From NCBI RefSeq assembly GCF_000143415.4, contig NW_003314261.1, positions 5,110,360 through 5,174,359 of the forward strand: a DNA stretch of 64,000 nucleotides, in the 5' to 3' direction. A program made the position numbers and the translations under genes. Each line of letters opens with the position of its first letter. Position 1 is the first letter of the stretch. This stretch comes from Selaginella moellendorffii (lineage: Eukaryota; Plantae; Lycopodiophyta). Below the pieces are notes generated by a model. The model made no database searches and was not told where the DNA came from. It saw nothing but the letters and a program-made list of their open reading frames with translations. Below, in pieces: positions 1,531 through 47,961 of this stretch.

Positions 1531-2722
1531 AGGTATATCCACTACCACCCTACAAGTTTACTTAAGCAAACCAAAAAGATAATCTCAACCAGAAAACAAT
1601 AATACTATAAGAATATTTTTAACATTTCCACTAGATAACAGGATAAAAACTAATCAGCAAACAAATAAGTATTTTTCATACAAGATATAACCTCTAAAAA
1701 AATAATGCCAAATAAGTAGAGTATTAAACTTTCTATATGATGAAATTAGACTAAAAAAGCCACAACATATCAATGACACCACCTAGGAATTCGGTTAAAA
1801 TGACACCAACAACAAGTGAACTGGTCTAGACCTAAACTTCTTTGTAATCACTTAAACAAAAAAGAAATTGATGAAGATAAAAACTAACTAATACTTATCG
1901 TTCATAAGGGCCTGATAATGAGCTTTATTGAATTACCTTTCACTACATTGTTGCCAAAATCCTTTATTTATATAAATCCCTTTGATGATGTCATTTTCTT
2001 GATCTCCCCATATTATCACTGTTTACAATAATCATGATATTCTAGGTCATTACAACCTATAATAGGATTAGGGGCCTTGGAGGAGAAAAAGGAAGAAGAT
2101 GATTATCAAGGGCCCTCATGACCTCTTAATGATCAATATTTGTATTGCCTCGTTTTTTGCCAGTGTCATTTTTCTTAATTAACTTTACCTAGAAGTAGTA
2201 TTATGGACATATGAAAAATCTTGAGCATAGTTAAGTTTTATTTTGATTATTATTCTAGTATTTATTATCTTTCTGCCACATGAGAATGCTGACTTGTCCT
2301 CTAAGTACACCTCTAATACCTTAGGTTGTTCCAATATTTATTAAAGATTGCCCAAGCTACCATTTCAAGAACATGTGTCATTCGATTTGAAGTCACTAAA
2401 TTATCTATTAAATAAATTAAAACAAAGATTGGACTGTATATATTTAAGAATTTATACAAAATTAAATTATGAAATAAAAAATATTTAATGTTGTAGTTTA
2501 ATGGATAATATAATTCCAACCCATTCATATTACCAATTCTTTAATTATGTTATAAATGAGCTTCAAACAAAACAAAAATTCAACCTAAAGCTAAAAGCAC
2601 TACCAGAAGCTAAAAATAATAAAAGTTTTTTCTTTACAGATATATACGATAGGACGATATTAACTATATATTTCTTTATATAAGAACTTTAGTTTTAATT
2701 ATTTCAGAAAAATTTAAATAAA

Positions 2723-3631
2723 ATGTTTAAAATTAAAACTGTAACTGTTTTCATTCTAAGTTATTCATATTTAGTACATATTTACTCAATTAAATATGAA
2801 TGGGGAAGTACTGAAGAAGAATGTTTCTTAAATGAGCAAGATGTTAATACTGTAATTAATGGCTTTTATACACTTGTAAGAAATATTGATCTTGATGAAG
2901 TTTATCCAATAACATATGAAGATGTATGTAGAGTTGAAACTTCTAGAGGAATTGTTTGTGTTAGAATTAAAAGATTTGAAAAATCAAAGCGTAATAATAT
3001 TTGTAAAATAGGAAAAACCACTTATACTAAATTTATGATTGGAAGAAGTTTAAGAATGTCATTCAATTCATTAATTACAGATAATCAAGGCCATTTGATT
3101 CTTAAAGGTGCAAACTCAGCAAAAATAACTTCAAGAAACTATCAAATACATTATGCTATGGCATTAGGTCCATCAAGACCCCCAATTTTATTATATAATT
3201 TTAAAACAAAATCACTATATGATTGTGATATTTCTCAAACTACTCTTGAAAGTGGAGATTTAAGAAGTCAATTTCTATATAGAGGAAATTTTTTAGTATC
3301 TCCAAATTCAAAACATATATTAATACTAGAATCTAGATGTAATTTAGTTATTTACTCTAAAAGGAATAAGATATGGGAAACTCCAATGGTTAAAAATATT
3401 GTGAATTGTTATGCTAAACTTCAAAACGATGGTAACTTTGTAATATATTCATATTCAAATAATGTTATATGGGCTAACAATATTTATTGTAAAAATCAAC
3501 CAAGTTGTGTTACTTTTACATTTTATACCTTGCAGGATGATTGTAATTTTGTAGCTTATAGAATGAAGTTTCCAAATGATGTTTGGTGGCAATCTGGCAC
3601 TTCAAATCATGCACTATGTGATAATAGTTAA
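2723..3631 (+). CDS. Secreted protein with C-terminal bulb-type (GNA-like) mannose-binding lectin domain; intronless, very AT-rich
   Basis: 302-aa ORF with hydrophobic N-terminus. QxDxNxVxY motifs LQNDGNFVIY and LQDDCNFVAY plus degenerate ESRCNLVIY, each followed by IW/WW. Confidence 0.8.
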   Translation: MFKIKTVTVFILSYSYLVHIYSIKYEWGSTEEECFLNEQDVNTVINGFYTLVRNIDLDEVYPITYEDVCRVETSRGIVCVRIKRFEKSKRNNICKIGKTTYTKFMIGRSLRMSFNSLITDNQGHLILKGANSAKITSRNYQIHYAMALGPSRPPILLYNFKTKSLYDCDISQTTLESGDLRSQFLYRGNFLVSPNSKHILILESRCNLVIYSKRNKIWETPMVKNIVNCYAKLQNDGNFVIYSYSNNVIWANNIYCKNQPSCVTFTFYTLQDDCNFVAYRMKFPNDVWWQSGTSNHALCDNS

Positions 3632-4755: not shown

Positions 4756-5455
4756 ATGGCTTACAAAAAGTGGCAGTCGACTCCGCTGCCGCTCGCGTCG
4801 CTTAATCACATATCTCGAAACTGCAGCAATGTCCAGGAGGCGATGGATTTCTATGTCAACGTGCTGGGCTTCATCCCCGTCAAGCGCCCTGGAGCATTGA
4901 ATTTCGAAGGAGCATGGTGAGCAGAAAGAGCAGAGAATAGAATTGGAAATATGGTGCTCACCGCTTTGCTTCTTTTTTTTTTTTTTGTCTTTTGCTGTTT
5001 CCTCTTTGATCTTCGGCTTCGACTCAAGGCTGTATAATTACGGCATCGGAATTCATCTTCTGCAGAGAGAGCCCGGCATCACTTACACCACCAACAAGTC
5101 GGACCAGATCAACACCCGAGCTGATCACATCTCCTTCCAGGTGAGAGCCGCAAAAAGAAGTTTTGAGTTTGTGCGATAAAAACGAAAATTCCTGCTCTCG
5201 CAGTGCGAGGATATCGATCTGGTGGAGAAGAAACTGGTAGAAGCCGGATCCGCATTTGTGAGAAGAGTCGTCGAGGAAGCTGGCATCGAAGTGGAGCAGA
5301 TATTCTTTCACGACCCGGATGGCTTCATGATCGAAGTGTGCACTTGCGAGAAGCTGCCGCTGGAGCCTCTAATAGGAGGAAACATGACCAACATCCGCAG
5401 CTGCCTTATGCCGTACATGAGAACCTCGGCCATTACCACCATTGAAAAGTTCTAG
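4756..5455 (+). CDS. Glyoxalase/bleomycin-resistance (VOC fold), lactoylglutathione lyase-like protein, 3 exons
   Basis: SLNHISRNC..FYVNVLGF..GAW / LYNYGIGIHLLQ..DHISFQ / QIFFHDPDGFMIEVCTC. Confidence 0.9.
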
Positions 5456-5777
5456 CTCGGAAGATTCTGCCGGTGAAGCGGGCTCCTCTCTGAGGTCCAA
5501 AAAATGAACAGTTCAGTTGAAATAGAAATCGTTGCTTAGCTCGGAAATCAGATAGGAATGGGCTACCGGACACGCAGTCGGCGCACTGCAGACGAATCTT
5601 GTACGAAAGAGACGTATAAAAAATGTATTGAAAGGAACGAAATACCTCTAGACGATCTCGCTTGTCAGGATAAACACGAGGTTGTAAAAGTGGGAAAAAA
5701 ATATCTTCTAGGCACCGGTGCGCACAACTACCAGCTTTTTACCTTGTATAAAGCCACTTTGGCAAAAGAAACGTGCG

Positions 5778-8583
5778 CTAGGCCATGTCAGGGACACCTA
5801 AATCCGAGTCCCCCTCACCTTCCCAATCCAGGGACATTGAGTTCGTTGCGTGCAAAAGGTCAGTCAGGCCAGCAACATCCTCCAGATAATTTGGGGAATT
5901 CAAGGCCTCTAGGATAAAAGCGAAGCCTCTTGCTTTGAACTCCGAGACGATCTAAATACCATGGTGTCAGAGAAAGAGAAAAAGAGAAACGGTGGTGCTA
6001 CCTTTGGTGAGCAAGCAGTGCAGCCATCGAAAGCAATCCCGGAAACGACGAGTTGTGCGTAGTGTGCGAGAAAGCCTCTAATCTGGTGGGGCAGTATTCC
6101 CATGGGCTGCTCGATGCTCGTCGTCACAGAAACCGCTTGATCAGCGGGAGCAGCTGGCCTGTAATATAGTAGAGTCAGCAATTAAATACAATGCTGAAAA
6201 CAGCTCACCCAAGTGGATGGTGCATTACAACCACCGCCATCTCTACAGCTAGCCCACCGGCAATAGGAGCTAGCGCAGGACGACTCACTGTGCATTGCTG
6301 ATCGAGCGTTCGGTTGACAGTCGACTAAAAGAAACCAAGGAATCAAAGGCAGAGACAAAATAGCAGTTTCGAGGCACAAACTTACATCAGTAGGTGCTAC
6401 GACATCAGTGCAGAAATAGCATCCAAGTCGCGGGTCTTGCGTGGAATTGAAAGGTCCCTCTCCATGCCGCATGACGACGAAGGAGTCGAAGCCAAGTGCA
6501 GCATTTATAACTATCTGCCATGGTGGCGGTTAGGATCATAATCGAGAATGAGGTAAACAAAGATACCTTAGATTGCTCAGCCGCTGCACACAAAATAGTT
6601 GGAAGCCAGCGACTTTCCCTTGTATCGGTTAAAAGGAAAATAACGTCATGTTCCTCTATCAAGCTTTGCAGCTTAGTGAAGTTATCAAAGGTTTCTTCAA
6701 CCTGATTCCCGCTCACGCTATGTCCAGCCATTGGTATTGATATTTGATGCCCTTGCGCCCTCTGCAAAAGCAAAAGGATCAAAATATTTACACCAAGTAA
6801 ACAACAGAGATATTGCAGTACCACATCGACACATTTCGTCCTTAGAGCTTCTTGAGCAGCTTCAACTTTTGAACGGCCACAATCTTTGATCTGGTATAAA
6901 GGTTGCCGCAATGGATTCGAGTATCCAACTTTGCCATAGTCTACAAAAGTTATGTCGCGAATACCCCACGCCTGGTGACATAAGAGTTACTGAAGACGTA
7001 CGATGAATTACAGAGGAGACTTACCAGAAGCCTCAAAGCAACTTCACACCCAAGTGTACCAGCACCAAGAAGCAAACATTTCGTCTTGGACAGTAGCAAG
7101 AGATTTAAGGACGGAAGACTGCGCCATTTCATAAGCTTAAGATTCAAGTCAGCCGCTGACTTCGCGAGCCTGTAAATTACAAAACTATAAGAAAGCCATG
7201 GTAAAATAGTACGTACATATCAGGATTCATTAAGGAAGAAAGATCGACTGATCGCGCAGAAGGTTCCCATCCAGCTGCTTTAGGCACGGCGTTCGTATTT
7301 TCTGGAAGGACTCTAGTTAGTAGCTTACCTTGTCTAGGAAAGCAAGAAAAAAACATACCACCGAATTCTTCAAAGGTAGCTGACGTGACAAAACAATGTC
7401 TTAAGTCAGTTCGTCCTTGTAGCTCACGCCAACACAAGATATCCACATTCTTTAAGCCCCACCGGACAGCGGCTAGAACAAGCAAATTCCTGACAGGCCA
7501 TCCGGGATTCGTTGGCAAATGTGAAGGATCATAAAAGCCCAGTAGAATCTGAAAACCTCCACGTCTGAGAAAAGGAGCACGCTCATAAAAAACTAGAAAA
7601 AAAAAAAATACCTTTCCACTTCCTTGGCATTTTTCCCAGTCACTCAAAGGCCTAACCGTGACACCATCACATGAAAGGTGCAGGAGAAAAAACGAAAGAC
7701 CTGTTGTACAATTTTTCTTTTCAGAAAACCAAAACAATCCCAGAAGCTTACATGTTGTCAATGGAGACGTTCTCCAGGCCGTACAAGCTGAAACAACTCG
7801 CAAGGACTGTGCAAACTGACCACATTACTACAGGAACAGCAAAGACATGAAAAACAAGTTACCTCTTCAGCAGTAAAATAATCCGAGGCCGGCTGGAACA
7901 TGGTGTGCTTCACAGCTTGAGTAAACTGTAATGCCGGGAAAGAAAACCAATACTTGAATCGCCATTCCTTCAAATCGGCATAGCAGATGACGAAGAACCG
8001 ATTTAGAAGGTTGGAGTCTTCCTCTGCCCGACCCGAGCAGATATCGTCCCACACCTTTAAGCAAAGAAGAAAATTTAGTGAGAGCTTAGCAAGCAATCAA
8101 AGCAAAATACCTTTGCAGTCTCCTCGTTCATCAAAGCATCCCTGTCTATGGAATTAAACTCATCACTCGTATTGGTATTGTATAGTGTTCCTGGCGCAGG
8201 GCATCGATTTCGATCGCTCGCAGGACTCTCCGTGCCGAGCTCCAGCGACAGAGACTCGTAGGTCAGCTGCAATGGCTTAGAAATCCTGGGATGGCTACAC
8301 GGAGCGAAGAATCCTACATTGCCGCAGCTTCAGCACACAGAAATTCCTAGATATTACGGGGATTACCTTGGATCTGGAGCGGCCGCCGGTCGAGACGAAG
8401 AACATCGAGCTTGAGATTCGCAAGACCATGCCAGAAATCAGCCGTGACGGAGCTCTGCCACGGCACGAACTTGAGGATGCGCGATTGCGTAGGCGCCGTC
8501 GCCGAACCCGATCCCGATCCAGCAGTGGCAGTGGAGGCGGAGGAGGAGGAGGGCGAGGAGGAAGGCGCTCCCGGTGGCGCCAT
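5778..8583 (-). CDS. ATG7: Autophagy E1-like activating enzyme ATG7 (multi-exon)
   Basis: [83 protein letters not shown]. Confidence 0.95.
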
Positions 8584-8643
8584 CTTTGAAATAGGGCTAA
8601 ATAGGGCACCACTGGGTTTTGCTAGGGCTTTGCTTCGTCCTAG

Positions 8644-10764
8644 ATGGACCTTGCGCTTCCAATACACTCTATCCAGCGTCTTCTTCCTCCAAGGTATGAC
8701 TCTAATTCTATCTTCTTGCTCACTACATCGTCCTTGATTTCTAGCTTGATAGATTTATGAGCTTACCCGCATTCTCTCTTTCAGATTTTTTCTTTGAGTT
8801 TTGAGCTCTTTCGTGTTTTAGATTTCTCTTCAATATTTGTGTAGGCTTGCTTCTTCCTATTGATTGATTTCTCTCCCTCTTCAGGTTTCTTCTACATTCT
8901 TTCTTGGTTTTTTGGAGTCCTAATTTGTTCCTTTCGTTTGCAGGAGTACTTTTAATTTTTCTAAGCTCTTACAGAGGTAACTGGTGCTCTTGAGAAGTAT
9001 ACTTCTAAGGTTCTTTTACAGGCCTGTTGTTAGTTTTTCCAAGGCATCTGATAGTCGGTACGTGAGAATGTAGTAACAAGTTTTTCAGCTATAGCTTTGG
9101 TTGATCTGATGAGGTTTTTTAATTCGTAGAGTTTTGCGAAATTCAGTATCGACGTCGGCTGCTGCTCAGGACGATCTTGCTGATGATTTGCTTGGAGAGT
9201 GGGATCCCAGCTACAATGAGAATCAGCCTTGGGACTACAAATCGTACCAAGCTTTGCTTCACGGAGGGGAAGAAGTCGTAAGCATTTTGGAGTCCATGAT
9301 AGAAGTGGTACGAGTTTTGCCATTGTTTTCTTTTGATTTTTTCAAGTTTGTTCTTTCCAGTTGGACGATGTTACTAGCCTGGACAAAGAATCCGAGGACA
9401 CGGCCATTCAGATGGCAGCACTGGCGTGCATCGGCCAAAGACTGGAGCATCTCGATGGCAGCTTCATGATGGCGTTGGACTTGATGATCGCTCAAGCCAG
9501 CAAAGACAAAGATGACAAGGTTGCTGCGTTAAGCTTCTCTTCCTCCTTTGCAGTTTTCATCAGGTGATTGATCGATTGATTGAGACTGACTGACTGATTG
9601 ACATCACCTTGTCGTGCTCCATCGAAAAGCCGAAGTTTTATGTTTTGTGACGATTGATGCTGACTATATGCTTTTCTTCTTCCAGAAAAAACAGCTTTTG
9701 GATGTCATCAAAGAGACGACGTTGGCTCAACTCACAGAAAAGGCATCGCCGGTGGTACGCTATCAGATCTTCTTTTTAGCTCCGACTCTAAGTTGGCTTT
9801 TCAGCTACAAATCGTGAGCATGCTTAGCCACACTCCCGACAAAGAGCATCGACGTCAAATCTTACGTTCTGCTGCTGGCGGTGGAGGCATTCACTCTGCT
9901 TCCGGTGGAGGCACGGTGACCGTCCCTGAAGGAAATCTTCTCCACATTGCCAATCAAGCCAACGACCTCATCAACGTGTCTCTCTCACCCAGCCTGTCTT
10001 TCACCTTTGCAGCTAAACGTGATCTCTTTCTTCTACAGGACATGGAGGAGAAACCGAAAGTGAATGACCGAAAGCTACTGGCAAAGCTCATTCTCATCAG
10101 AGAAGAAGCACACGATATGCTCGGCGGAGGTATTCTCGACGAGCGAAACAAGCCGGGACTTAAAAGCTTGCCCGCACCCGAGGTAGTGGATTACTTTCGT
10201 TTTCCTTTCCTAAGAAACGTTCATGGTCCCAGGTAAACTTCATCTCGAAGTTAGTCGCAGTAAGACCAGGGCCTCTTCTACGCGAGAAGCTCGAGAATGT
10301 AATGCGGGGGAGGGACGAAGGCGCGGACGTTGAAATGGAGGAGTCACAAGAAGGCGATGAGGTAGAACTTTTGGTGCTCTTTCTTTCATCGCTTTTCTAA
10401 ACCCGTGGGACTCCAGAAAAACGTTAAAGTGAAGAAAATGAAGATGGTGCTTCCCGTCCGGCCTGGAATGTTTCTCGAGACTGTGACAAAGGTATTTAGT
10501 GTTTCCTCTGATCTTTTATCCATCTCTATTTCACAGTTGCTCGGTGGCATGTATAATAACAAAACCGCTGCTGGAATCACAGTCCAGCACCTCGACTGGG
10601 TGAGTAAATTCTTACGGTTGTCTATCTTTCGAGTGACAATCCCAATCCAACAGACTTACAGGACGACTCTCGAAATCCTCCAAGAAATCGCCCACGGGAA
10701 GCACAGCGTCAAAAACGAAACAAACGCTGACAATACAAAGGACTTCAAAACCTCTAGTTCGTAA
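8644..10764 (+). CDS. PRDA1: Plastid nucleoid protein PEP-RELATED DEVELOPMENT ARRESTED 1-like; first exon 8644-8693 tentative
   Basis: YQALLHGGEEVVSILESMI, FMMALDLMI, IANQANDL, DRKLLAKLILIREEAHDMLGGGILDERN, LPVRPGMFLETVTK, GITVQHLDW match PRDA1 from recall. Confidence 0.85.
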
Positions 10765-10907
10765 GCATGTTTCCATAAACATATTTTTAATGAAACTCTG
10801 TACATTACTTCTTATACCTGAGATGCGAAGCCCAAGTTTTGTTCTTGCTGCATCTTCCAAAAACTTAATAGATTATCTCGCTGCTCTACTAGAAGAAAAT
10901 GGAGCTG

Positions 10908-12557
10908 CTAACCTCTTGGAGGATTTACCGGCCTGTCTACCACGATAGTGAGCTCCGAGCTATGGCTTCTCCCTTGAAGAGAAGAGCCTTGAGAGTCTCC
11001 GCTGCTTTGGCTTTGAGCCGGGTCGTCACTGGCACCGGGAGGAGCGGTGCTCAACATGTCGTGAAGCCTGACCATGACACGGCGAACTTCTTGCTCGGCT
11101 TGCTGGTTGAGAACCACCATAAGATCAGCCTCTGGGAAAACCGAGCACCGGCACTGCGGGCATTTTACGTTGAGGCGTAGCCACTCATCGATGCAATCCA
11201 CATGAAAGTTGTGCGCACAAGGAAGTCCTCGCACCTGGATGATGCTTATTCACAAAAGGAGTGACGACAAAAGCCGAAGTACCTCAGTTCCAACAGTGAA
11301 GTCCTCTAAGCATATGGAACACGACGAGCACTCGGTAGGGACACGCTTGAGCTGGAACTTTGGGAGCTGCTGGATCAAGCTCTCCACTGCTTCTCTCTAC
11401 AGCACGAGATTAACACCTAAAGGCATTCCAGTGAATAAGAACACTCACCTGCGCGGGAGTGAGCGTTAGACCGGGAAAGGCAATGGTGTCATGAGCAGTT
11501 CGTTGCTCTTGCACGGGAATGGAGGAACGTAGAGTCCAATCTGGAACCCTGATCAGCTCCGCCAGCACCTGCATGTCCAACTAACGTAAAAGACGAACAG
11601 AGAAAGAATGCGAAGTACCTCCAATTCCGAGATGGCAGATCCTTGAGGAACAAGTTGCAAATGAGACTGCCGTCGCATCAACCACTGAAGGAAATAAAGA
11701 GTTTCTTGCACTCTTTGAATCAGAAAGCAAACTAGTAGTTTACCTTGCTGGCGGACATGCATGCGATTGAAATCAGGCCGCAATAGCTGAAAAGTAACCA
11801 GATAAGGAATCCCCATTTCTGCCCTTCTTCTGGAAGCTAAAACAAACAAGAAAGAGGTGTTCTTCAACTCGAAACATATGAAACAGCAATGCCAAACACT
11901 TACGCATTGCCTTGCATTTGTAAACCACAAGCTCCCGATGACAGTCCACGCCCAGAGAAACGGATACATGAAAAACGCAAGGCAGGACAACACCAAAACT
12001 CTGGCCTGGAAGAGCAACAGCCGCTGCTGAGGGCTTGCATCACTGCGCACAGACACACACACACACACACAGAAAGCCTATCAGAAAGATAAAAAAAAGA
12101 TTCGGTGTTCCACAGTGAAAGCACTTACGGGCCCATCTTTGACGCTATGCCGTTGTCCACAAACATGAGAATCCGGAACACAAAAACAGTAGCATAGTCC
12201 ACCTAGAGCGAAAAAAAGCAAAGAGATCCATGAGGAAAAGCTACAAGCTCGCTAGCTAGTCTTGCAAAGCTTACCACGATCCAGATGTGAAGAGGATACA
12301 TGCACGCGTGATACCTATCCCAGTTGATAGACACTACGATCCTGTGGAGATCAATCATCTATTGTCAAGGAATCCATCCACAAGAGAAGAGGAAAACACA
12401 AAATCGAGCTAAAAGCCGATAAGGATACACGCTGGTGGCGAGCATTGACAAGAAAAATCCATCGAACCTGCGAGAAATAGTTCTCTCTGCGGTGAGCGAA
12501 TGCGCGAGAAAGAGGAAGCAGCACTTACCACTTGAAATCCACGCCGCGAGCGCCCAT
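10908..12557 (-). CDS. SIS3: Transmembrane RING-H2 E3 ubiquitin ligase SIS3-like
   Basis: [10 protein letters not shown] / [21 protein letters not shown] / [15 protein letters not shown] / [35 protein letters not shown]. Confidence 0.9.
12342..12428 (-). other. U12-type (minor spliceosome) GT-AG intron in SIS3
   Basis: Donor GTATCCTT, branch site TTCCTTGAC and CAG acceptor; splicing restores ATSVIVVSINW. Confidence 0.75.
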
Positions 12558-14815: not shown

Positions 14816-15852
14816 TCATCCCTCGACTTGCATGCGATGCATACGCCGAGTTCTCTCTGGACAAAGCAATTCACGGTAAATAAGTTCCTCGCGAACTTTG
14901 ATCTCCAAGTACGTACCTGCGGCAATTCGCCTGTTTCCCATTCCTACAATCTCGCATTTGTAGTTCATGTAGAGCTGGTTTGTGGTCTTGGGAGTCTTCA
15001 TATGCTTGGGATTCCCGTCACACAGGCTGTTTGAGTAGATTCCAGTGAACTAATTTGTTTCTTCCAGGCACAAACTCTAAGCTTACCAGTTAGCCAAGTA
15101 GCTCGCGTTCCGGCAGTCCATGTTTTGGACGCCGACATGGCTTCGCATCACCTCAGGCTTTCGGTTTCTGGGAGCATTCGGGTAATATGGCATTAACTTC
15201 TTGCAGGATAAGTCACTAGCTTCGCCGATCTTTTGTATTTGTCCTTGGAAGAAAGAGTTTGTCCTGCAGAGGTTTACATATCGTTTCAACAAGTATGAGC
15301 GATGGAAGCCGAGACCTCACGTTTCATCCTGGAAGACGGGATGAAACGCGTAGGAGTTCGGTGCCTTGTAGCCAGTCTTGATCGTCTTGTGAGGGATCTG
15401 CGAACCAAATCGCAGGTGAGTGTTTTCCATTTTATCCTTTCATCTAGATCTCTCAAAGTCACTGAGATGTTGTTATACAGCATACAAATCTCCGGATCCA
15501 GGCATGCGAATAAGCTGGACAAGTGTTCCAGTCCGGCCTTCGTACTTGTTCTTCTTTGGGCCGTCGTCGTGGGGGCGAGAAACACTCTCCCGCTTGGGCA
15601 CTTGAGCTGCGTCATCGAGGACGAGGACAATCAGATCAAAAGCCAGGCGAAAAGGAAACGAACAGCGAGCGAGAATCGACATCGACACTCACGGGGGTGA
15701 TTTGCCAGGTACTCTTGATGCCTTCTCTCGGCCTCTTTCATCTCCGAGTGCTTCATCTCATGGAACTCCTTGTCCCACTCGCAGTGGCCCTCGTGCAAGC
15801 TGTGCGCGCATTTGTCATCGTGACGGTGATCTTTCTTCTTCCCCTTGGCCAT
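14816..15852 (-). CDS. Uncharacterised multi-exon protein
   Basis: Chain of coding-like segments bounded by splice-like signals, from MAKGKKKDHRHDD to ..RMQVEG*. No domain recognised and exon structure uncertain. Confidence 0.45.
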
Positions 15853-16108
15853 GGCGAGCGCAAAAACCTTTGATGGATCGATTCGAGGGCCAGGCAGCGC
15901 TAGAGAATGGAGTTCTTCATCACTGGGAAGGGGTTCGCGTGAAGGGGTCAAATAGGGAGGAAAAACGGTTACTACTTCACATGACCGGGACAGGTGACAG
16001 GGCTCTACAGTGACCGTTAGGTTTAGGGCTGACGAAGTTGGGCGCGGCAATCCTTGATCCCAGCGGATACACGCCCAGTTGGAGTACCAAAACCGGAGGG
16101 TCTATGCG

Positions 16109-17758
16109 ATGGAGCACGATGGCGAGACTCAGGATGATGGGGCGCCACGGCCCATTGTCCAAATCCAAATGTAAGCATTTCGTTCGGTCGTTCTTCCATG
16201 TTTTTTGTTCTTGGTTTTTTTCTCTCTCTCTCACTTGCTCGTCTTTTTTTCGCCAGGAAAGGCAAGGAGGCAATGTGCTGTGGCTTTTCCTACGATAGCA
16301 ACTGGTTAGCAGCTGGGAACGATACAGGAAGAATTGAGGTACTACTGCATCTGGAGTTTCCGAGCTAAAGCCATTCTTTTGATCTGCTGCCAGATCTATA
16401 GAGTCTCTGATGGAGGCCTGGCTTATGTTTTGGATCGAAAAGCCACACAAAAGTTCGCCTGCACGACAATGTCCTTCCGGCCGCCCTCGAGCTGCTTTAC
16501 CAGCAGGAACGTTCTCGTATCTTGTGGTAAGCGTTTTGATTGTCTCTCGGCGAGTGAGTGCTGGATATAATCTTTAGCATTTCCTTGTTGCAGACGTTGG
16601 TGGTCTTATTCACCACTGGCATGCAACATCCGGAAAGCACCTCGGCACCACCAAAGAGGCTAACAATCACATCAACGCGGTGGATTTCCAGCCGACCGGA
16701 GAGAAGTTCGCGACGGGTGGTAGCGATTTTCAGGTGAAGTCAGTGAATTCACGAAGCATTTCTTGTCAAACTTCCGTCTCGTATCTAGCATTACAGGTCC
16801 GAGTCTACGACGAAGCCACCAGGAAAATCGTGCATACGTTAAGTGATGGGTACGCTAAGCAGTTCTGAGCTTTGATCTTGCCCCTCGCTCAATCAAGCAT
16901 TCAGGGTCGTCGCACAGCGATGGGATCAAAGTTGTGGGCCACTCCAACCGTGTTTTCGCTGTTCGTTGGCATCCCGTCGATTCTCACATCATTTTGAGCG
17001 GAGGCTGGGACAACACTGTCCAGGTTCTTGCTTCACTACTTCACGCGTCATTCAATCTTACTGAGGTTTTCTTGGTGCCACCTAGATCTGGGATTTGCGC
17101 TGTGGTAGATCGGTGAGGAGCATCTTTGGACCAAAGCTGTGCGGGGAAGCTCTTGACGTGTCTGATAACAACAAGATCCTAACCGGCTCTTGGCGATCCA
17201 CCAAACAATTACAGGTCCGTTACTCTGGCACGCTTGTGTTTTTGGACGAGGGAATCTTTTTTCCTTCACAGGAATGGGACTTTGGAACTGGTGACCTGAT
17301 AAGAACTCTGGAGTGGATGAGCAACGAGGTACCATAGTAAAAATTCGTTTTTTGTGCAACTGAGCTCAAAAGTTCCCATCTCCAGCCGAGCCAAGTCTAC
17401 ACTGCTCAGTACGGGAAGGGCCTCTCTCACAAATACATCGTTGCTGGAGGGAGCAAACCAAACAGTGCTTGCGTTTTCCACAAAGACAGTGGCCAGGTAC
17501 TATAGCCTCGAGTTCTTCTTTCGAAGCTCATCACGGCCGATTCCTTTGCCAGGCACTCGCGGGAGTCTCCGGACTGGAGAAGGGTGAGAACGAAAACGAA
17601 TTCTCTTCAAATGAGGGATTAAGAAAACTTTGTTCTTCTTTTCCGCAGCTGTTTACTCGGTCGCCATCTCGGAGTCTGGATCTTACCTCGCGGTCACCAC
17701 GGCAGATAACGTCTATCTCTACGACATGATCGACCTCACGAGCTCCATTTATGGTTAG
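16109..17758 (+). CDS. WD40-repeat protein (multi-exon)
   Basis: AVDFQPTGEKFATGGSD..VRVYD, GHSNRVFAVRWHP..ILSGGWDNTVQ.WD, ILTGSWRSTKQLQEWD; TAG at 17756-17758. Confidence 0.85.
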
Positions 17759-18439
17759 AAGTAGATCCATTCGTTGCTATTTTGGAGAACTCTTATCTAA
17801 ACAGTGAATTTTATAGAAAATGGTGGGGAGGGGAATCGAACCGCGGCAGGGGGTCTGACGTGGCCGCCACGGGGGCATCGAGCGCGGCCGGACTAGGGTT
17901 ATGACATGGGTTCCTTCCATGATCTGCGAGCGCCGTGTCGGACGAAGGCTCTCTAGACCTACTATGGTATGACATCGCTCCCTTGTAAATCCCTTGTTTT
18001 TCCTTTTATTCCCTCGCATTTTTTAGATTTGTGGAGGGAGCGATGGAGGGAGAGTGCATTCCGGCCTCTAGCGGAGGATTTCTCCCTTGTTCCCTCTCAT
18101 GGCAGGATCTTGCAAGAATGCGGTAGCGCGAGGGATCTAGGCGGAGGATCGAGAGCGCAAGAATTTCCAGGTACGATCGATCGATCCCGCCTAGGTTGCT
18201 GGAATTTCGCCCGTGTGTTGTCTGGTTTGCTTGAGTCTGGATGAAATCCTTTCTGTTTGTGAAGATTTTCGCGCTTGCCTTGCGTTAGCTGGTTTCTTCT
18301 AGTCGATCCCGAGCAAAATTTTCTGGTGTGCTTGAGTGCTTGCCTCTGTAGAAGACTTTAATCAGTCAGTCATAGAACTTTCTTTGTTGGTGGATGGAGT
18401 TTCTTGATCGTTTTTCTTCGCAGATTAAATTATTTTCCA

Positions 18440-19876
18440 ATGGCCAAAGAGAGATCAAAAAGGAAACGCGATGGCGCAGCAGTGGTAGAAGGAGTAGCCG
18501 CCGCCGCCACCACCAACAACAACAACACGACCCCTCCTTACAATGGCTCGGACGTTCCAACTTGGCCCCGCTGGGCTCATCCACGCCCGGATAGTTTCTA
18601 CGGCGCTCCAGCTCCATACAACGCTTACGACTGGTCGCATTCATGGCCGTCACACATGAGAGGTGGCGGCGGCGGCGGCGGGGACTCCAACTTTCCTGGC
18701 GGCGACTTTGGCGGATTCCCAAGAGCTGGCTATGCATTCCCAGGCGCTGCAATGCAACCGGGACCGGGGCCAGTGCCACCCTCCGCTACACCACCTCCGG
18801 CCATCAACACTTCGCCACCTCGGGCATCGCCACCCTCGTCAGCTCTCCGCTCCGACTCCCAGAGCGATGGATCGTCCTTCTCGGACGGAGACACCCCGAC
18901 GCAGGAGGCAGACGAGGGGACGAAGCACAGGAGGAAGCGAAAGAGCTCCGAGAAGAAGAGCGCCGCCGACTCGACCAAGAGCAAGGATCCCAAAGGAAAG
19001 TCGGCCGGGGACGAGAACACCGCCAAGAACAAGCGCTACGGGATCGAGGAAGTCAAGGACCTGGTGAGGTTCCGGACGGAGTTACAAGCCAAGTTTGAGA
19101 CAATGTCGACGCACCTGGAGCTGTGGACGAGCATCGGCGAGAAGATGGGCGAGCGCGGGCATCCCAGGAGGCAGTGGGAGAGCTACCGGGACAAGTGGGA
19201 CATCGAGCTGCGTCGGTACCAAAAGGAGCTCAAGCTGCTGCTTTCACAGGCCGGACTGGCCGAGAACAAGGAGCTCGAGCACCCGGAACAGCTGGTCTTC
19301 TCGGACGAGACGCTCCAGGAGATCCACAGCCGGCTCAACTTGCGGCCCAAGGCGGCGCTGCGGTCGCGCTTCCAGAGCGGCGTCGGCGGCGCGAGGGGAT
19401 GCCTGGGCGACGAGGCCGCTGCTCGTGAAGTCGCCGGGAAGAGGATGAAGAAGTCCGCAAACAACCAGCTGCTCGTAGACTCCATCGTCGATAAGGTGGT
19501 AGAGAAGGTTGGGACTTTCGATGACACCGCCTCGGCACAGGGATTCAAGGAGGTGCTGGACGCCGTCGTCAACCTCACGAACGTGTTGCTGGCGGAGGCG
19601 AGCGCGCAGCCGACCGAGTTTGAGATCGACAACCAGGTGTTCAGCTGGCTCAAGAGCATCGGCAAGGACCAGTACGCGAGCTACTTCGCGGCGTCGCACG
19701 TAGACTGGACCAACTTGCTGCTGCTCGACAAGGATGATCTAATGGAGATGAAGATCCCGGTCGGGCCTCGCAAGTTCATCCTCAAGGAGCTGGAGAAGCT
19801 CAGGCCGGAGATCCACGGCAGTAGCGGCCAAGCCATGACCGTGATCCCAGGCCAAGAACCCGAAGGCGTTGTATAA
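18440..19876 (+). CDS. Harbinger ORF1-type trihelix/Myb-SANT DNA-binding protein with C-terminal SAM domain
   Basis: Trihelix RYGIEEVKDLVRFR..LWTSIGEKMGERGHPRRQWESYRDKWDIELRRY; SAM VFSWLKSIGKDQYASYF..VDWTNLLLLDKDDLMEMKIPVGPRKFILKEL. Single-exon CDS; probable 5'UTR intron 18171-18423. Confidence 0.85.
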   Translation: MAKERSKRKRDGAAVVEGVAAAATTNNNNTTPPYNGSDVPTWPRWAHPRPDSFYGAPAPYNAYDWSHSWPSHMRGGGGGGGDSNFPGGDFGGFPRAGYAFPGAAMQPGPGPVPPSATPPPAINTSPPRASPPSSALRSDSQSDGSSFSDGDTPTQEADEGTKHRRKRKSSEKKSAADSTKSKDPKGKSAGDENTAKNKRYGIEEVKDLVRFRTELQAKFETMSTHLELWTSIGEKMGERGHPRRQWESYRDKWDIELRRYQKELKLLLSQAGLAENKELEHPEQLVFSDETLQEIHSRLNLRPKAALRSRFQSGVGGARGCLGDEAAAREVAGKRMKKSANNQLLVDSIVDKVVEKVGTFDDTASAQGFKEVLDAVVNLTNVLLAEASAQPTEFEIDNQVFSWLKSIGKDQYASYFAASHVDWTNLLLLDKDDLMEMKIPVGPRKFILKELEKLRPEIHGSSGQAMTVIPGQEPEGVV

Positions 19877-19905
19877 CAGAGTAAACTCTTCTCCCCCAAC
19901 CTCAA

Positions 19906-21288
19906 TCAAGTCTTTTGCCGCTTCCTGGAGTATAACATCTCGGCGAGGCCGTCGCGGATCTCGCGAGCTCGCTGCATGTCCGCGGTGTGGTTGAATCCTG
20001 CCGGGAGTGGCAGCGGCTCCATGACTCTCGCCAGACGCGCGGCATCGGACGTCGCGGTGGCTGACTCCAGCTCTTGCAGACCCGCCGTGGCGATCATCAC
20101 CTCCGCCGCGGCTTGCTCCAGCGTGGGCTCTCTCCCGGACGAAGAAACACCTCGGGTCGACTCGAGAGCTTGGCGGGACTCTTCAATCCAGGCCGGGTCG
20201 GCGCTCTCGTTCTGCGAGAGCAGCATGTTGTGGAGCGTGCAGCACACCCCGATCATCTGGACGGTGGTGTCCAAGTCGCCCTCCATCTTCTTGAGCAGCA
20301 CCCGGAACCTCGACTTCAGTTGGCAGAAGGCCCGCTCGATGGAAGCTCTCGCAGAGGCGAGCGCTTGGTTGAAAGACTGCTGCTGGGGCGTAAGCTGGCC
20401 ACCACCCCGGTATGGACACATCAACCACGGCCTTGGAGGATTGAAAGCCGAGTCCCCGACGAGGTGGTATCTCTGCTGGTCGATGAGCCCCTCGCCGGCT
20501 CTCCTCGCGATCCTGGAGCTGGCCAGAGCTTGCGAATCGTGCAAGCTCCCGCAAAGCCCAGCGTCGATCTCGAGAAAAAACCCGTCTTGGTCGACTGCAG
20601 CCATGAGGATCATCGAGTGGAAGGACTTGTCGTTATAGTAATTCGAGCGATCGATGCTCGGGGTGGTGATGGGAATGTGGCTTCCATCCACCGCTCCGAT
20701 CACGCTGGGGAAGCCAGTCTCGAGCTCAAACTTTGCGGCAATGTCCCTGGCTCGGTCCCCGGTTGGCCACCCGATGTAAGCGTCGGTCCAGTGCTTGGCG
20801 ATGATCCCCAGCCCCTTGTGGACGATCTTGTTCACGGTGGACTGGTCGCAGAAGAAGATCTTGGCGATGGCGTGCTCGCGGCCGCCGTGGAGCAATCGCC
20901 AGAGGAGCATCGCGACGCGGCGGCGGAGGGAGATGACGCGCCAGTTGGGACCTGTTCTATTCCCCTCGAATCCACACGGCTGGAAGATCGTGAAGCACAG
21001 CCACTCGAAGGTCGCCTTGGTGCAGCGGAAATCCTTCCAGAACTGGCCATCGTCGTACTGCGGGAAGATCGTCGTGTCCCAGGTGTCGGTGTGGTGCATG
21101 AGCATGTCTCTCACCCAGGTGGATTTGGCCGGCGCGCCGTCGAGGATCCCCTGCTGGATCTCCGACACGATGCTCACGATCGCCGACTTGCGCCGCTCGA
21201 ATCGCCGCTTGCTCGCGTTGCGGCAGTAGATGAGCGCTCCCATGATGAGGGACATGGCGACTTGCTTGCGGTACCTCTGATCTTCCAT
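19906..21288 (-). CDS. PIF/Harbinger DDE transposase (HARBI1/ALP1 family, DDE_Tnp_4) with intact catalytic triad
   Basis: FRCTKATFEWL, HTH-like IAKIFFCDQSTVNKIV, IGAVDGSHIPI, YYNDKSFHS, GSLHDS, LVGDSAF, RASIERAFCQLKSRF, CCTLHN. Probable 5'UTR intron near 21492-21528. Confidence 0.93.
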   Translation of the reverse strand: MEDQRYRKQVAMSLIMGALIYCRNASKRRFERRKSAIVSIVSEIQQGILDGAPAKSTWVRDMLMHHTDTWDTTIFPQYDDGQFWKDFRCTKATFEWLCFTIFQPCGFEGNRTGPNWRVISLRRRVAMLLWRLLHGGREHAIAKIFFCDQSTVNKIVHKGLGIIAKHWTDAYIGWPTGDRARDIAAKFELETGFPSVIGAVDGSHIPITTPSIDRSNYYNDKSFHSMILMAAVDQDGFFLEIDAGLCGSLHDSQALASSRIARRAGEGLIDQQRYHLVGDSAFNPPRPWLMCPYRGGGQLTPQQQSFNQALASARASIERAFCQLKSRFRVLLKKMEGDLDTTVQMIGVCCTLHNMLLSQNESADPAWIEESRQALESTRGVSSSGREPTLEQAAAEVMIATAGLQELESATATSDAARLARVMEPLPLPAGFNHTADMQRAREIRDGLAEMLYSRKRQKT

Positions 21289-21849
21289 CGCAGCGTCGGG
21301 CGACCAAGAAATCCGAGACGATGCCCCTGGAATCCACGAAATCCGAGACCATGAGATCGAAATCGCATCCAGGCCAAGAAACGTGATCAAGACAGGGAAG
21401 AATCCCTGGATATGCGAGGGGCTCCAATCCAGATCCAAGAAATTTCCAAGAAATCCAAGAAGGGAAAGAGTTTAAGATCAAATTCCTCACTGTAACGACA
21501 ATGATCACAGAAACAACGAGACTTACTGTAATCTGGCGGCTAGCGGCTCAGCGGCTCATCCCCTCAGCGAAAGAACCCTAGCGTAACGGGCCCGTAGGCC
21601 GCCCACTTAGTAGTATAAATATCTAGGTCTATGGTCAGATCAAATTCCATGACCCACATTCTTTTTCTTCTTTGTTTCACTCTCGAGAATCTCGTGCGAG
21701 AAGGGGCGCTCGACGAGGCCGAGGCGCCACTGGGCGCTGGAAGCTCGAGGCGCTGCGAGGGAAATCTCTATCGAGCGATCGATATTTCGTAGGTTCTCTG
21801 CTCGATCGATCGATTTGTAGGTTCTTTGCGGCAGGACAATCCGAATTCC

Positions 21850-43330: not shown

Positions 43331-43465
43331 TTCTTCGATTTAATCTGCTTAGATAGTGTGAGTTATCAATCTGAGGGACATTCATGCCTTTAAATACTCG
43401 ACAAATCACACCAAACTTTTAGGCCACCCATAAGCAGGACTTTTGCGATGAGTATATCTGTGATT

Positions 43466-44274
43466 TTATGTCAAGCTCCAAAAGTCCGCTTCGTCTATCC
43501 AATCATATGGCGCCCTCTCAACCACGAGAAAGTCTCCTCGAATATCCTTGGCCAGCCGAATATGCTCGCCCAGATATACGGATTCGAACTTAATAGATCG
43601 CTCCAATTATTTGTACTGGTAAAATCTGTAAAAACTTACCAGCCTTTACCGAAGGGAGGGACTGGTAAACTCCAGGTATCACTTCGAAGAAGCGCGCCAG
43701 TAAACCTATGGCCAGAAGAACATATCAAAGGAATCACCACTGGAGTATATCTCAACTGGAATTCCACTCTCTTGTCCGAGACAACCTCCATCGTGGAGGC
43801 CACCACGAACGCTCCAGAGGGTGGAAATGTGATGACATTGTTTAATCGATTCTCGCCCACATCGATCACCTGCATAGAACAAGAGCCTAGATTTCATTCC
43901 TGTGGTCTTTGTTCTTTCACCTGGAGAATGTCGCCAGCGCGAGTGCCAAATAGAGGCGCCTTGTCCACGATGAAGAGCTGCTCCTTCTCGGTCGTCCACA
44001 GCATCCTCCACGTCCCTGAGAGGCGCGAATCGGTGGTGATTCCATCCGAGCTCACCGACTCGGCAGCGAGCGCCTCGAAGGCGCGAAGAATCCTGTCTTT
44101 TCTCCTCTTGTCCTTCTGGCTTCTCAGCCCTCTCTCATCGTCGGAGATGAGCCCTAGCAGTTCATCCCTCGCGGCGATGGAAGCTCGGCATTGGTGTTTT
44201 CTCGATCCGGCAGCAGCAGCGTAGCGAGTGGGAAAGATCGTGGCTGGGGTGGAAATATTTCCTAGTGACACCAT
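43466..44274 (-). pseudogene. Fibrillin (PAP_fibrillin, FBN9-like) copy 1, probably damaged
   Basis: About 99% identical to copy 2, but the last acceptor is AG>AA (43590) and YLD>YLG. Confidence 0.65.
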
Positions 44275-47017: not shown

Positions 47018-47152
47018 TTCTTCGATTTAATCTACTTAGATAGTGTGAGTTATCAATCTGAGGGACATTCATGCCTTTAAATACTCGACAAATCACACCA
47101 AACTTTTAGGCCACCCATAAGCAGGACTTTTGCGACGAGTATATCTGTGATT

Positions 47153-47961
47153 TTATGTCAAGCTCCAAAAGTCCGCTTCGTCTATCCAATCATATGGCGC
47201 CCTCTCAACCACGAGAAAGTCTCCTCGAATATCCTTGGCCAGCCGAATATGCTCGTCCAGATATACGGATTCGAACCTAATAGATCGCTCCAATTATTTG
47301 TACTGGTAAAATCTGTAAAAACTTACCAGCCTTTACCCAAGGGAGGGACTGGTAAACTCCAGGTATCACTTCGAAGAAGCGCGCCAGTAAACCTATGGCC
47401 AGAAGAACATATCAAAGGAATCACCACTGGAGTATATCTCAACTGGAATTCCACTCTCTTGTCCGAGACAACCTCCATCGTGGAGGCCACCACGAACGCT
47501 CCAGAGGGTGGAAATGTGATGACATTGTTTAATCGATTCTCGCCCACATCGATCACCTGCATAGAACAAGAGCCTAGATTTCATTCCTGTGGTCTTTGTT
47601 CTTTCACCTGGAGAATGTCGCCAGCGCGAGTGCCAAATAGAGGCGCCTTGTCCACGATGAAGAGCTGCTCCTTCTCGGTCGTCCACAGCATCCTCCACGT
47701 CCCTGAGAGGCGCGAATCGGTGGTGATTCCATCCGAGCTCGCCGACTCGGCAGCGAGCGCCTCGAATGCGCGAAGAATCCTCTCTTTTCTCCTCTTGTCC
47801 TTCTGGCTTCTCAGCCCTCTCTCATCGTCGGAGATGAGCCCTAGCAGTTCATCCCTCGCGGCGATGGAAGCTCGGCATTGGTGTTTTCTCGATCCGGCAG
47901 CAGCAGCGTAGCGAGTGGGAAAGATCGTGGCTGGGGTGGAAATATTTCCTAGTGACACCAT
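47153..47961 (-). CDS. FBN9: Plastid-lipid-associated fibrillin (FBN9-like) copy 2, intact
   Basis: LSGTWRMLWTTEKEQLFI..GDILQ/VIDV..LNNVITFPP..PPLGKGW/FESVYLDEHIRLAKDIRGDFLVV. Confidence 0.85.

What the first reader, a model, noticed from the sequence alone, without database searches (positions are those of the whole stretch)
18440..21288. Harbinger transposase paired with a trihelix-SAM fusion protein, no TIRs: candidate new domesticated chromatin or recombination module
Seen: two intact single-exon, CpG-rich CDSs tail-to-tail. The transposase keeps D(DGSH), D(GDSAF) and E(IERAF). The partner has a Pro/Gly/Tyr low-complexity N-terminus, basic NLS-like patches, a trihelix Myb domain and a clear C-terminal SAM domain. 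Each gene has an inward-facing CTAGGGTT telo-box (17893; 21574) and a probable 5'UTR intron. No TIR/TSD was found, and other TEs in the window are decayed. Established: PIF/Harbinger elements encode a DDE plus a Myb/SANT protein, and such pairs were domesticated as ALP1/ALP2, HDP1/HDP2 and HARBI1/NAIF1; SAM domains polymerise or bind RNA. I know of no SAM-fused Harbinger ORF1. Inference: a lineage-specific domesticated pair with a possibly active nuclease and a polymerising DNA-binding subunit, or a new Harbinger lineage with atypical ends.
Basis: partly seen in the sequence, partly recalled or inferred. Interest (0 to 1): 0.85.

Follow-up and report, generated by a model that had tools for sequence, protein, structure and literature searches.

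The report
Host-kept Harbinger gene pair with SAM
In the lycophyte Selaginella moellendorffii, two neighbouring genes left behind by a Harbinger "jumping gene" (a DNA-cutting enzyme and its DNA-binding helper, which unusually carries a SAM protein-protein contact domain) have lost the transposon's ends. They remain intact, transcribed and under selection, so the plant probably keeps them for a use of its own.

Summary
Window 18440-19876(+) encodes a 478-aa protein with a low-complexity N-terminus, a trihelix/Myb domain and a clear C-terminal SAM domain. Window 21288-19906(-) encodes a 460-aa Harbinger DDE transposase with D201/D279/E318 intact. The two stop codons lie 29 nt apart, tail to tail. 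The window is Selaginella moellendorffii.

- **Origin of the SAM fusion:** It is not a local invention. A 12-kb contig from another, unidentified organism (L011) carries a real 6.4-kb Harbinger transposon with perfect 15-nt inverted ends and TTA duplications. It encodes the same Myb-SAM protein tail to tail with the sister transposase (tree support 100/99). That copy's transposase is broken.
- **The Selaginella pair:** It has no inverted ends beyond chance. It sits at the same site on both haplotypes, between WD40 and MATE genes. Spliced RNA contigs from four studies cover it.
- **Selection:** Allelic differences are mostly silent (pN/pS 0.14 and 0.20, joint p = 3e-7), and coding indels are in-frame only.

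Best reading (about 0.6): a pair co-domesticated from one insertion of a previously undescribed SAM-bearing Harbinger lineage.

Not shown: genome-wide copy number, orthologues in other species, the strand of transposase transcripts, and any biochemical function. It is a new variant of a known kind, of moderate interest.

The parts
17817..17966 (+). Exon shared by two genes. It is the last coding exon of the upstream WD40 gene (stop TAG 17894-17896) and the first 5'UTR exon seen in Myb-SAM contigs. It contains the CTAGGGTT 8-mer at 17893-17900.
   Evidence: Joints 17753/17817 and 17966/18027 in RNA contigs. The RefSeq WD40 protein P0013 ends ...RARPD. 8-mer located.
17967..18026 (+). 5'UTR intron 1 of the Myb-SAM gene (60 nt, GT-AG).
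   Evidence: Joint present in all four runs, which come from four studies.
18027..18170 (+). 5'UTR exon 2 of the Myb-SAM gene.
   Evidence: Contig pieces in X1, X2 and X10.
18171..18423 (+). 5'UTR intron 2 of the Myb-SAM gene (253 nt, GT-AG).
   Evidence: Joint present in all four runs.
18440..19876 (+). Myb-SAM protein CDS (478 aa, single exon). It has a Pro/Gly/Tyr-rich N-terminus and basic patches.
   Evidence: It is identical to a RefSeq-listed protein of S. moellendorffii.
19034..19234 (+). Trihelix / Myb_DNA-bind_4-like domain (residues 199-265). The aromatic positions are Y200, W226 and W242/W249.
   Evidence: Pfam E=1e-5, 26.3 bits against a cut-off of 27. GT-1 2ebi E=1.4e-3.
19292..19390 (+). 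Conserved linker motif (residues 285-317, LVFSDETLQEIH...R.Q..GG), shared by all three family members. Function unknown; a transposase-contact region is one candidate.
   Evidence: Invariant columns in alignment A1; position.
19628..19804 (+). SAM domain (residues 397-455).
   Evidence: Pfam SAM_1 E=7e-13. Model pLDDT about 80 with five helices. Foldseek top hits are all SAM domains.
19906..21288 (-). Harbinger DDE_Tnp_4 transposase CDS (460 aa, single exon). Catalytic codons: D201 at 20686-20688, D279 at 20452-20454, E318 at 20335-20337.
   Evidence: RefSeq calls it 'protein ALP1-like'.
21289..21495 (-). Probable transposase 5'UTR. Contigs run unbroken to 21419-21495 and show no intron.
   Evidence: table 8. 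The contigs are unstranded.
21496..21732 (.). Untranscribed gap of about 240 bp between the transposase and the MATE gene; a probable shared divergent promoter. It holds AACCCTAG at 21574-21581 and TATAAATA at about 21616.
   Evidence: Zero depth over 21500-21663 in all runs; MATE contigs start at 21733/21784. Sequence.

Best explanation
**What it is.** The pair is the immobilised, host-retained remnant of one insertion of a rare PIF/Harbinger lineage. In this lineage the second gene natively encodes a trihelix/Myb DNA-binding protein with a C-terminal SAM domain.

**In the transposon (inferred from how Harbinger elements work).**
- The Myb protein binds subterminal repeats and brings the DDE transposase to the ends.
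- The SAM domain would let bound Myb proteins associate with each other and help pair the two ends.

**In S. moellendorffii (shown).**
- The inverted ends and target duplication are gone.
- The two genes are squeezed between host genes WD40 and MATE.
- The Myb-SAM gene has a spliced 5'UTR that shares an exon with the WD40 gene.
- Both reading frames stay intact with a complete DDE triad.
- The alleles differ mainly at silent sites.

**Most likely working model (inferred).** This is a co-domesticated two-protein module like HARBI1/NAIF1, HDP1/HDP2 or the insect PLG/PM pairs. The Myb-SAM subunit targets DNA, self-associates, and recruits or imports the nuclease-derived subunit. The host role is unknown.
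For: **Harbinger identity**
- DDE_Tnp_4 E=2e-34, and a Myb plus SAM partner.

**Same lineage as a real transposon.** Contig L011 holds a 6380-bp element at 5233-11612:
- Its ends have 15/15 perfect inverted termini (27 nt at 89%) and TTA duplications on both sides, with subterminal repeats inside them.
- It encodes a Myb-SAM gene with one GT-AG intron, tail to tail with a transposase.
- The inverted-repeat score is 18 against a shuffle maximum of 12.
- The window and L011 transposases are sisters at 100/99 support. They share an 'AFNPPR' insertion and a long C-terminal extension.

**Loss of mobility marks in the window**
- No TIR beyond chance.
- No relic of the L011 terminus or its subterminal motif.

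**Fixed locus**
- The order MATE, transposase, Myb-SAM, WD40 is the same on the second haplotype scaffold.
- There is no other copy in the window.
- The protein collections hold only the two allelic forms.

**Constraint**
- Myb-SAM has 13 silent and 6 replacement differences (pN/pS 0.14, p=4e-5).
- The transposase has 9 silent and 6 replacement differences (0.20, p=2e-3). The joint p is 3e-7.
- Coding indels are +3 and +6 nt only.
- Substitution density is 8-10 per kb in the CDS, against 19-27 per kb in the adjoining non-coding DNA.

**Transcription**
- Contigs with GT-AG joints from four studies cover both genes.

**Precedent**
- Co-domestication of both genes from one insertion, still adjacent, is documented in insects (PMC9710019).
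Against: - **Selection test:** It rests on only 34 allelic or strain differences within one species. No orthologue in another species was found or could be searched for, so age and cross-species synteny are unknown.
- **Copy number:** It was not measured on the whole genome. Unannotated copies would escape the protein collections.
- **Strand:** RNA contigs carry no strand. Cover over the transposase could be read-through from the convergent Myb-SAM gene.
- **Intact triad:** A complete DDE triad and the TE-like adjacency also fit a recently immobilised element.
- **Composition:** GC3 of the pair (0.77 and 0.82) is somewhat above neighbouring host genes (0.60-0.70). That would fit a fairly recent arrival.
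- **Myb score:** The Myb domain falls 0.7 bits below Pfam's cut-off.
Confidence: 0.6

Rival explanations
1. A recently immobilised autonomous element, not yet or not truly domesticated. The copy lost its ends but still makes a working transposase and Myb-SAM protein. These may move non-autonomous relatives (MITEs) elsewhere in the genome. On this reading the intact frames reflect youth rather than host selection.
For: - The DDE triad is complete.
- The two genes keep the transposon's tail-to-tail arrangement.
- GC3 is above that of neighbouring genes.
- First-stage notes report other Harbinger elements in this genome (untested).
Against: - Allelic differences are strongly biased towards silent sites (joint p=3e-7). 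An immobile copy cannot owe that to selection at the transposon level.
- No trace of TIRs, or of the lineage's terminal motif, remains.
- The flanks are fully merged with host transcription units. Both points argue against youth.
Confidence: 0.2
2. The Myb-SAM reading frame is functionally part of the upstream WD40 transcription unit. It would be a read-through or bicistronic mRNA, or an alternative 3' end, driven by the WD40 promoter. The transposase would be a passenger.
For: - One contig (X10, record 8) runs from the penultimate WD40 exon through exon 17817-17966 and both UTR introns into the Myb-SAM CDS.
- The old JGI model fuses the two into an 859-aa protein.
Against: - In the RNA-supported splice form, the WD40 frame stops at TAG 17894-17896.
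- The JGI fusion needs a skipped exon and an acceptor that no run shows.
- With the observed acceptor at 18424, the fused frame meets TAA at once.
- Contigs built from short words can merge two overlapping transcripts.
- This reading does not explain the constraint on the transposase.
Confidence: 0.12
3. A still-mobile Harbinger element whose ends were missed, either because they are atypical or because the element is larger than the two genes.
For: Both genes are intact with a complete catalytic triad.
Against: - Host exons lie within 550 bp on one side and 450 bp on the other. These intervals hold no inverted repeat beyond chance.
- The related transposon has ordinary, easily found ends.
- The pair occupies the same site on both haplotypes.
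- No second copy is known.
Confidence: 0.05

Closest known systems
HARBI1 / NAIF1 (vertebrates)
   Same: A Harbinger transposase-derived protein and a Myb/trihelix-like partner retained together as host genes without transposon ends. From my own knowledge, HARBI1 keeps the catalytic residues, as the Selaginella protein does.
   Different: - From my own knowledge, HARBI1 and NAIF1 are unlinked and conserved across vertebrates.
- The Selaginella pair is still adjacent, and conservation beyond one species is not shown.
- I know of no SAM domain in NAIF1; I did not test this.
Insect PIF co-domestications from a single insertion (DPLG7/DPM7, APLG1/APM1, APLG2/APM2, LPLG2/LPM2; PMC9710019)
   Same: - Transposase and DNA-binding genes from one insertion remain neighbours.
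- TIR and TSD are lost and the pair is single copy.
- The genes are under purifying selection and are transcribed.
- The criteria used there are the ones applied here.
   Different: - Those partners are MADF proteins without SAM.
- Those cases are backed by synteny across distant species, which is missing here.
- This case is in a lycophyte plant.
ALP1 / ALP2 (land plants; PMC7282668)
   Same: A plant Harbinger-derived nuclease and partner that interact with each other. RefSeq's automatic name for the Selaginella transposase is 'ALP1-like'.
   Different: - ALP2 lacks the three tryptophans of the Myb domain and is not next to a nuclease gene.
- The Selaginella partner keeps two tryptophans plus a tyrosine, carries SAM, and is adjacent.
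- The nearest relative of the Selaginella transposase among the sequences compared is a transposon copy.
HDP1 / HDP2 (angiosperms; PMC5339849)
   Same: A co-domesticated Harbinger pair. HDP2 keeps a DNA-binding trihelix/Myb domain.
   Different: - The DDE triad is not fully conserved in HDP1, but it is complete here.
[quoted passage not shown]
- No SAM domain is reported for HDP2.
Canonical PIF/Harbinger transposons (PIF, Pong/Ping, Harbinger3_DR)
   Same: - Two genes, a DDE_Tnp_4 transposase plus a Myb-like protein.
- The related element in L011 has GGCC-type inverted termini, a 3-bp TTA duplication and subterminal repeats.
   Different: - The Myb-like protein of this lineage ends in a SAM domain. 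I found no description of such an architecture.
- It did not appear outside this small family in an exhaustive search of 1.84 billion representative proteins.

Membership tests
PIF/Harbinger superfamily (by descent) | DDE_Tnp_4-type transposase with a D-D-E triad | tested here: met
   Pfam DDE_Tnp_4 E=2e-34. D201, D279, E318 and all 27 near-invariant columns are kept.
PIF/Harbinger superfamily (by descent) | Second gene encoding a Myb/SANT/trihelix DNA-binding protein | tested here: met
   - Myb_DNA-bind_4 E=1e-5, 26.3 bits, just under the 27-bit cut-off.
- GT-1 trihelix 2ebi E=1.4e-3.
- A homologous gene sits inside a bona fide Harbinger element.
PIF/Harbinger superfamily (as a mobile element) | Terminal inverted repeats and a 3-bp TWA target-site duplication | tested here: not met
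   - Window: best flank inverted match scores 10, and 39 of 100 shuffles reach it.
- Window: no relic of the lineage's terminus.
- The relative in L011 meets this feature.
PIF/Harbinger superfamily (as a mobile element) | Several related copies in the genome | tested here: inconclusive
   There is one copy in the window, and the protein collections hold only the two allelic forms. The whole assembly could not be searched.
Co-domesticated Harbinger pair | Purifying selection on both genes at a fixed locus | tested here: met
   Allelic pN/pS is 0.14 and 0.20, joint p=3e-7. Coding indels are in-frame only. This is within one species.
Co-domesticated Harbinger pair | Orthologues in conserved synteny in other species | not testable with these tools
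   Synteny is shown only between the two haplotype scaffolds. No plant genome collection was available.
Co-domesticated Harbinger pair | Transcription of both genes | tested here: inconclusive
   Spliced contigs from four studies prove transcription of Myb-SAM. Contigs also cover the whole transposase gene, but they carry no strand.
Co-domesticated Harbinger pair | Physical interaction of the two proteins and a host function | not testable with these tools
   Needs co-IP or yeast two-hybrid, plus mutants.
ALP1 orthologue (RefSeq name 'ALP1-like') | Groups with land-plant ALP1 in a tree; the partner is ALP2-like (no Myb tryptophans, unlinked) | tested here: inconclusive
   The partner's features are not ALP2-like. 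The nearest relative among the sequences compared is a transposon copy. A tree with ALP1 itself was not made.
SAM domain (PF00536) | Sequence match above the curated cut-off and a five-helix fold | tested here: met
   49.2 bits against a cut-off of 23. The model has five helices at pLDDT about 80. Foldseek hits have TM up to 0.84 on the target.

The most novel reading that the evidence does not exclude
A Harbinger lineage has added a self-associating SAM domain to its DNA-binding subunit, so that end-pairing is driven by oligomerisation of the helper protein. In Selaginella this module was captured whole with a still-competent nuclease. That would give the plant a DNA-targeted, polymer-forming nuclease or chromatin scaffold with a programmed host function, such as site-specific cleavage or locus clustering.
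Probability: 0.15. Interest if true: 0.8.

Novelty: new variant of a known kind. Interest (0 to 1): 0.55.

Why it matters
Co-domesticated Harbinger pairs recur in animals and flowering plants, often in chromatin complexes. Two questions remain open: how the two-protein module is captured, and what the nuclease half still does.

This locus offers three things together:
- a lycophyte example caught at the 'still adjacent, triad intact' stage;
- a close transposon relative with known ends, so excision, binding and interaction assays can be designed directly;
- an unreported accessory domain (SAM) on the DNA-binding subunit, which suggests a testable mechanism for end synapsis and for higher-order assembly on host DNA.

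It also corrects two annotations. One is an artefactual 859-aa WD40/SAM fusion model. The other is the uninformative name 'ALP1-like'.

Tried and rejected
- **Full-length Myb-SAM word-index search:** It found nothing, not even the protein itself, probably because low-complexity words filled the candidate list. The profile search returned only P0048. These blanks are uninformative.
- **Multi-stretch hits to the Myb region:** They turned out to be TPR/NACHT proteins.
- **C-terminal-SAM hits:** They have no Myb domain. Neither group belongs to the family.
- **Metagenome scans:** The Myb-SAM profile and a clade-specific 'GD[ST]AFNPPR' DNA pattern gave no relatives. Sixteen chance matches were checked by tblastn.
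- **ESM Atlas:** Only plain Myb_DNA-bind_4 clusters at lead-level scores.
- **tRNA-like string at 17832-17845:** ARAGORN finds no tRNA.
- **Upstream ORF in the organism-X transcripts:** It is not WD40-like, so synteny is not shared.
- **Run accessions:** A paper search gave no organism names.
- **PDB:** It holds no Harbinger transposase relative.
- **WD40/Myb-SAM fusion protein (JGI model):** Rejected on the RNA-supported splice sites.
- **Horizontal transfer:** I considered it because of the high GC3. Neighbouring host genes reach 0.60-0.70, so the contrast is too small to argue from.
Full report
**1. What is there**

The window is Selaginella moellendorffii. The 460-aa product of 21288-19906(-) is 99% identical to RefSeq XP_024527583, 'protein ALP1-like'. 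The 478-aa product of 18440-19876(+) is itself held in the protein collection. Its 90%-identity cluster includes XP_024527582, 'uncharacterized protein LOC112345342'. Each protein is recorded on two scaffolds of 3.67 and 6.95 Mb, which are the two haplotypes of that assembly.

Both ORFs are intact and convergent, with stop codons 29 nt apart.

Pfam results for the partner protein:
- SAM_1 at E=7e-13 (residues 397-455).
- Myb_DNA-bind_4 at E=1e-5, 26.3 bits, a hair under the 27-bit cut-off.

Pfam gives DDE_Tnp_4 at E=2e-34 for the transposase.

The GT-1 trihelix structure 2ebi matches residues 203-262 at E=1.4e-3. An AlphaFold model from a four-sequence alignment is poor overall (mean pLDDT 54). 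It nevertheless gives a five-helix bundle at pLDDT about 80 for the SAM region, and every top Foldseek hit is a SAM domain.

D201, D279 and E318, and all other near-invariant columns of an alignment with eight other Harbinger transposases, are kept.

**2. The SAM fusion belongs to a transposon lineage**

An exhaustive phmmer search of residues 190-478 against 1.84 billion representative proteins gave only two hits below E=1e-30. One was the Selaginella cluster itself. The other was P0017 (E=1e-57, 38% identity, Myb to SAM). A weaker hit, P0048, covers the linker and SAM.

P0017 and P0105 come from about 3-kb contigs of 13 runs of one accession series. The 628-aa form has a tandem duplication of the N-terminal and Myb module, followed by one SAM.

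P0048 lies on a 12.3-kb contig, L011. There the Myb-SAM gene sits tail to tail with a DDE_Tnp_4 gene.

L011 contains a textbook Harbinger element at 5233-11612 (6380 bp):
- Its termini, CGGCCTTATTCCAAC..., are perfectly inverted over 15 nt (27 nt at 89%).
- TTA is duplicated on both sides.
- It has subterminal GAAACTCAGGTGAAACTC-type repeats.
- The inverted-repeat score is 18 against a maximum of 12 in 100 shuffles.
- Its Myb-SAM gene has one GT-AG intron, inside the Myb domain.
- Its transposase carries one in-frame stop at a conserved tryptophan and one frameshift, as expected of a decaying transposon copy.

The Selaginella and L011 transposases are 32-44% identical. They share an extra residue in the 'GDxAFNPPR' motif, a 'GLCGS.HD' motif and a long C-terminal extension. 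They are sisters at 100/99 support among the nearest database relatives.

The three Myb-SAM proteins also share a conserved linker motif between Myb and SAM.

None of the other SAM or Myb hits combines the two domains. I found no paper linking SAM domains to Harbinger proteins.

**3. The Selaginella copy is not a transposon any more**

- **Inverted repeats:** Between the WD40 stop (17896) and the Myb-SAM ATG, and between the transposase ATG and the MATE transcripts (21733), there is no inverted repeat beyond chance.
- **Lineage terminus:** There is no match to the lineage's terminus or subterminal motif.
- **Second haplotype:** The other haplotype (L012, GL377573.1) has the same order, MATE, transposase, Myb-SAM, WD40. 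It aligns over the whole region at 96-98%.
- **Copies in the window:** There is no second copy in the window.

**4. Constraint**

I combined the haplotype differences with the variants seen in RNA contigs. The Myb-SAM CDS has 13 silent and 6 replacement changes (pN/pS 0.14, binomial p=4e-5). The transposase has 9 silent and 6 replacement changes (0.20, p=2e-3). The joint p is 3e-7.

Most replacements are conservative (S/T, E/D, V/I, A/V, A/G, Q/E, Q/H); one is R/G. The only coding indels are +3 and +6 nt, while the 5'UTR of the transposase has a 14-nt indel. Substitution density is 8-10 per kb in the two CDSs, against 19-27 per kb in the adjoining non-coding DNA.

The comparison is between alleles of one fixed locus. 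This bias therefore cannot come from selection among transposing copies.

**5. Transcripts**

Contigs of four runs from four studies show GT-AG joints, so they derive from RNA.

The Myb-SAM gene has two 5'UTR introns (17967-18026 and 18171-18423).

One contig links the penultimate WD40 exon to the Myb-SAM CDS. This could mean read-through transcription or two overlapping units, and short-word contigs cannot tell these apart.

The old 859-aa JGI fusion model is not supported. It needs exon skipping and an acceptor that no run shows. With the observed acceptor the fused frame stops at once.

Contigs cover the entire transposase gene up to 21419-21495 without an intron. Then there is a 240-bp silent gap holding AACCCTAG (21574) and a TATA-like box, before the MATE transcripts start. 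This looks like a divergent promoter.

Two caveats apply. The contigs have no strand, and one contig spans both 3' ends, so sense transcription of the transposase is likely but not proven.

**6. Interpretation**

Shown:
- Harbinger descent.
- Membership of a SAM-bearing lineage that has normal transposon ends elsewhere.
- Loss of those ends here.
- A fixed locus on both haplotypes.
- Intact frames and catalytic triad.
- Allelic constraint.
- Transcription of at least the Myb-SAM gene, with host-integrated structure.

Inferred:
- The pair is co-domesticated from one insertion, the route documented in insects (PMC9710019).
- The Myb-SAM subunit targets DNA, self-associates through SAM and recruits the nuclease-derived subunit. 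In Ping, Harbinger3_DR, ALP and HDP pairs the two proteins interact (PMC7282668, PMC5339849).
- The host function is unknown.

Compared with ALP2, which has no Myb tryptophans and is unlinked, and with HDP1, whose triad is degenerate, this pair looks less diverged from its transposon ancestor.

**7. Limits**

- I could not search the whole Selaginella assembly or other plant genomes. Copy number, age and cross-species synteny are therefore open.
- The organisms behind L011 and P0105 are unknown.
- Coding GC differs widely among the three family members: GC3 is 0.77 in Selaginella, 0.55-0.71 in L011 and 0.35 in P0105.
- GC3 of the pair is moderately above neighbouring host genes. I do not read more into this.
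- Earlier scan notes mention other Harbinger elements in this genome. I did not test them, and a sequence look-up was blank.

Noticed in passing
window 2699-3628 (+): A 310-codon open frame of extremely low GC (0.26, GC3 0.12), with a B_lectin (D-mannose-binding lectin) match at E=2e-8. Its composition is far from the rest of the window.
   Followed up: partly
window 15647-19876; proteins P0011/P0014: The 859-aa JGI models EFJ31785 and EFJ38071 ('SAM domain-containing protein') fuse the WD40 gene to the Myb-SAM gene. The RNA-supported splice sites end the WD40 frame at 17894-17896, so the fusion is an annotation artefact.
   Followed up: yes
window 19877-19905 and contig 19142-21495: The two convergent genes have stop codons 29 nt apart, and one RNA contig spans both. 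Their 3' ends must therefore overlap in antisense. In the related transposon the same interval is about 2 kb.
   Followed up: no
window about 21777: MATE-gene contigs of runs X2 and X3 carry 150-180 nt before 21777 that do not lie on the window (loose end GCGCGCGCTGCCGATCG...). This could be an alternative upstream exon or a haplotype difference.
   Followed up: no
L011 1201-1642 and 12163-12272: About 80-bp tandem units built around the palindrome CCATACCGACCGTCGGTATGG lie on both sides of the Harbinger element. Plant-type telomere-like AAACCCT runs lie at 3487-3513 and 12116-12150.
   Followed up: no
L001-L010 (protein P0105): The 628-aa relative has an internal tandem duplication of the N-terminal, basic-patch and Myb module (residues about 1-235 and 236-470) before a single SAM. 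The identical protein is encoded on contigs of 13 runs of one accession series.
   Followed up: partly
window 43394-44221 and 47081-47908 (+): Two 276-codon open frames of equal length and near-identical composition, with no Pfam match for the one tested.
   Followed up: no
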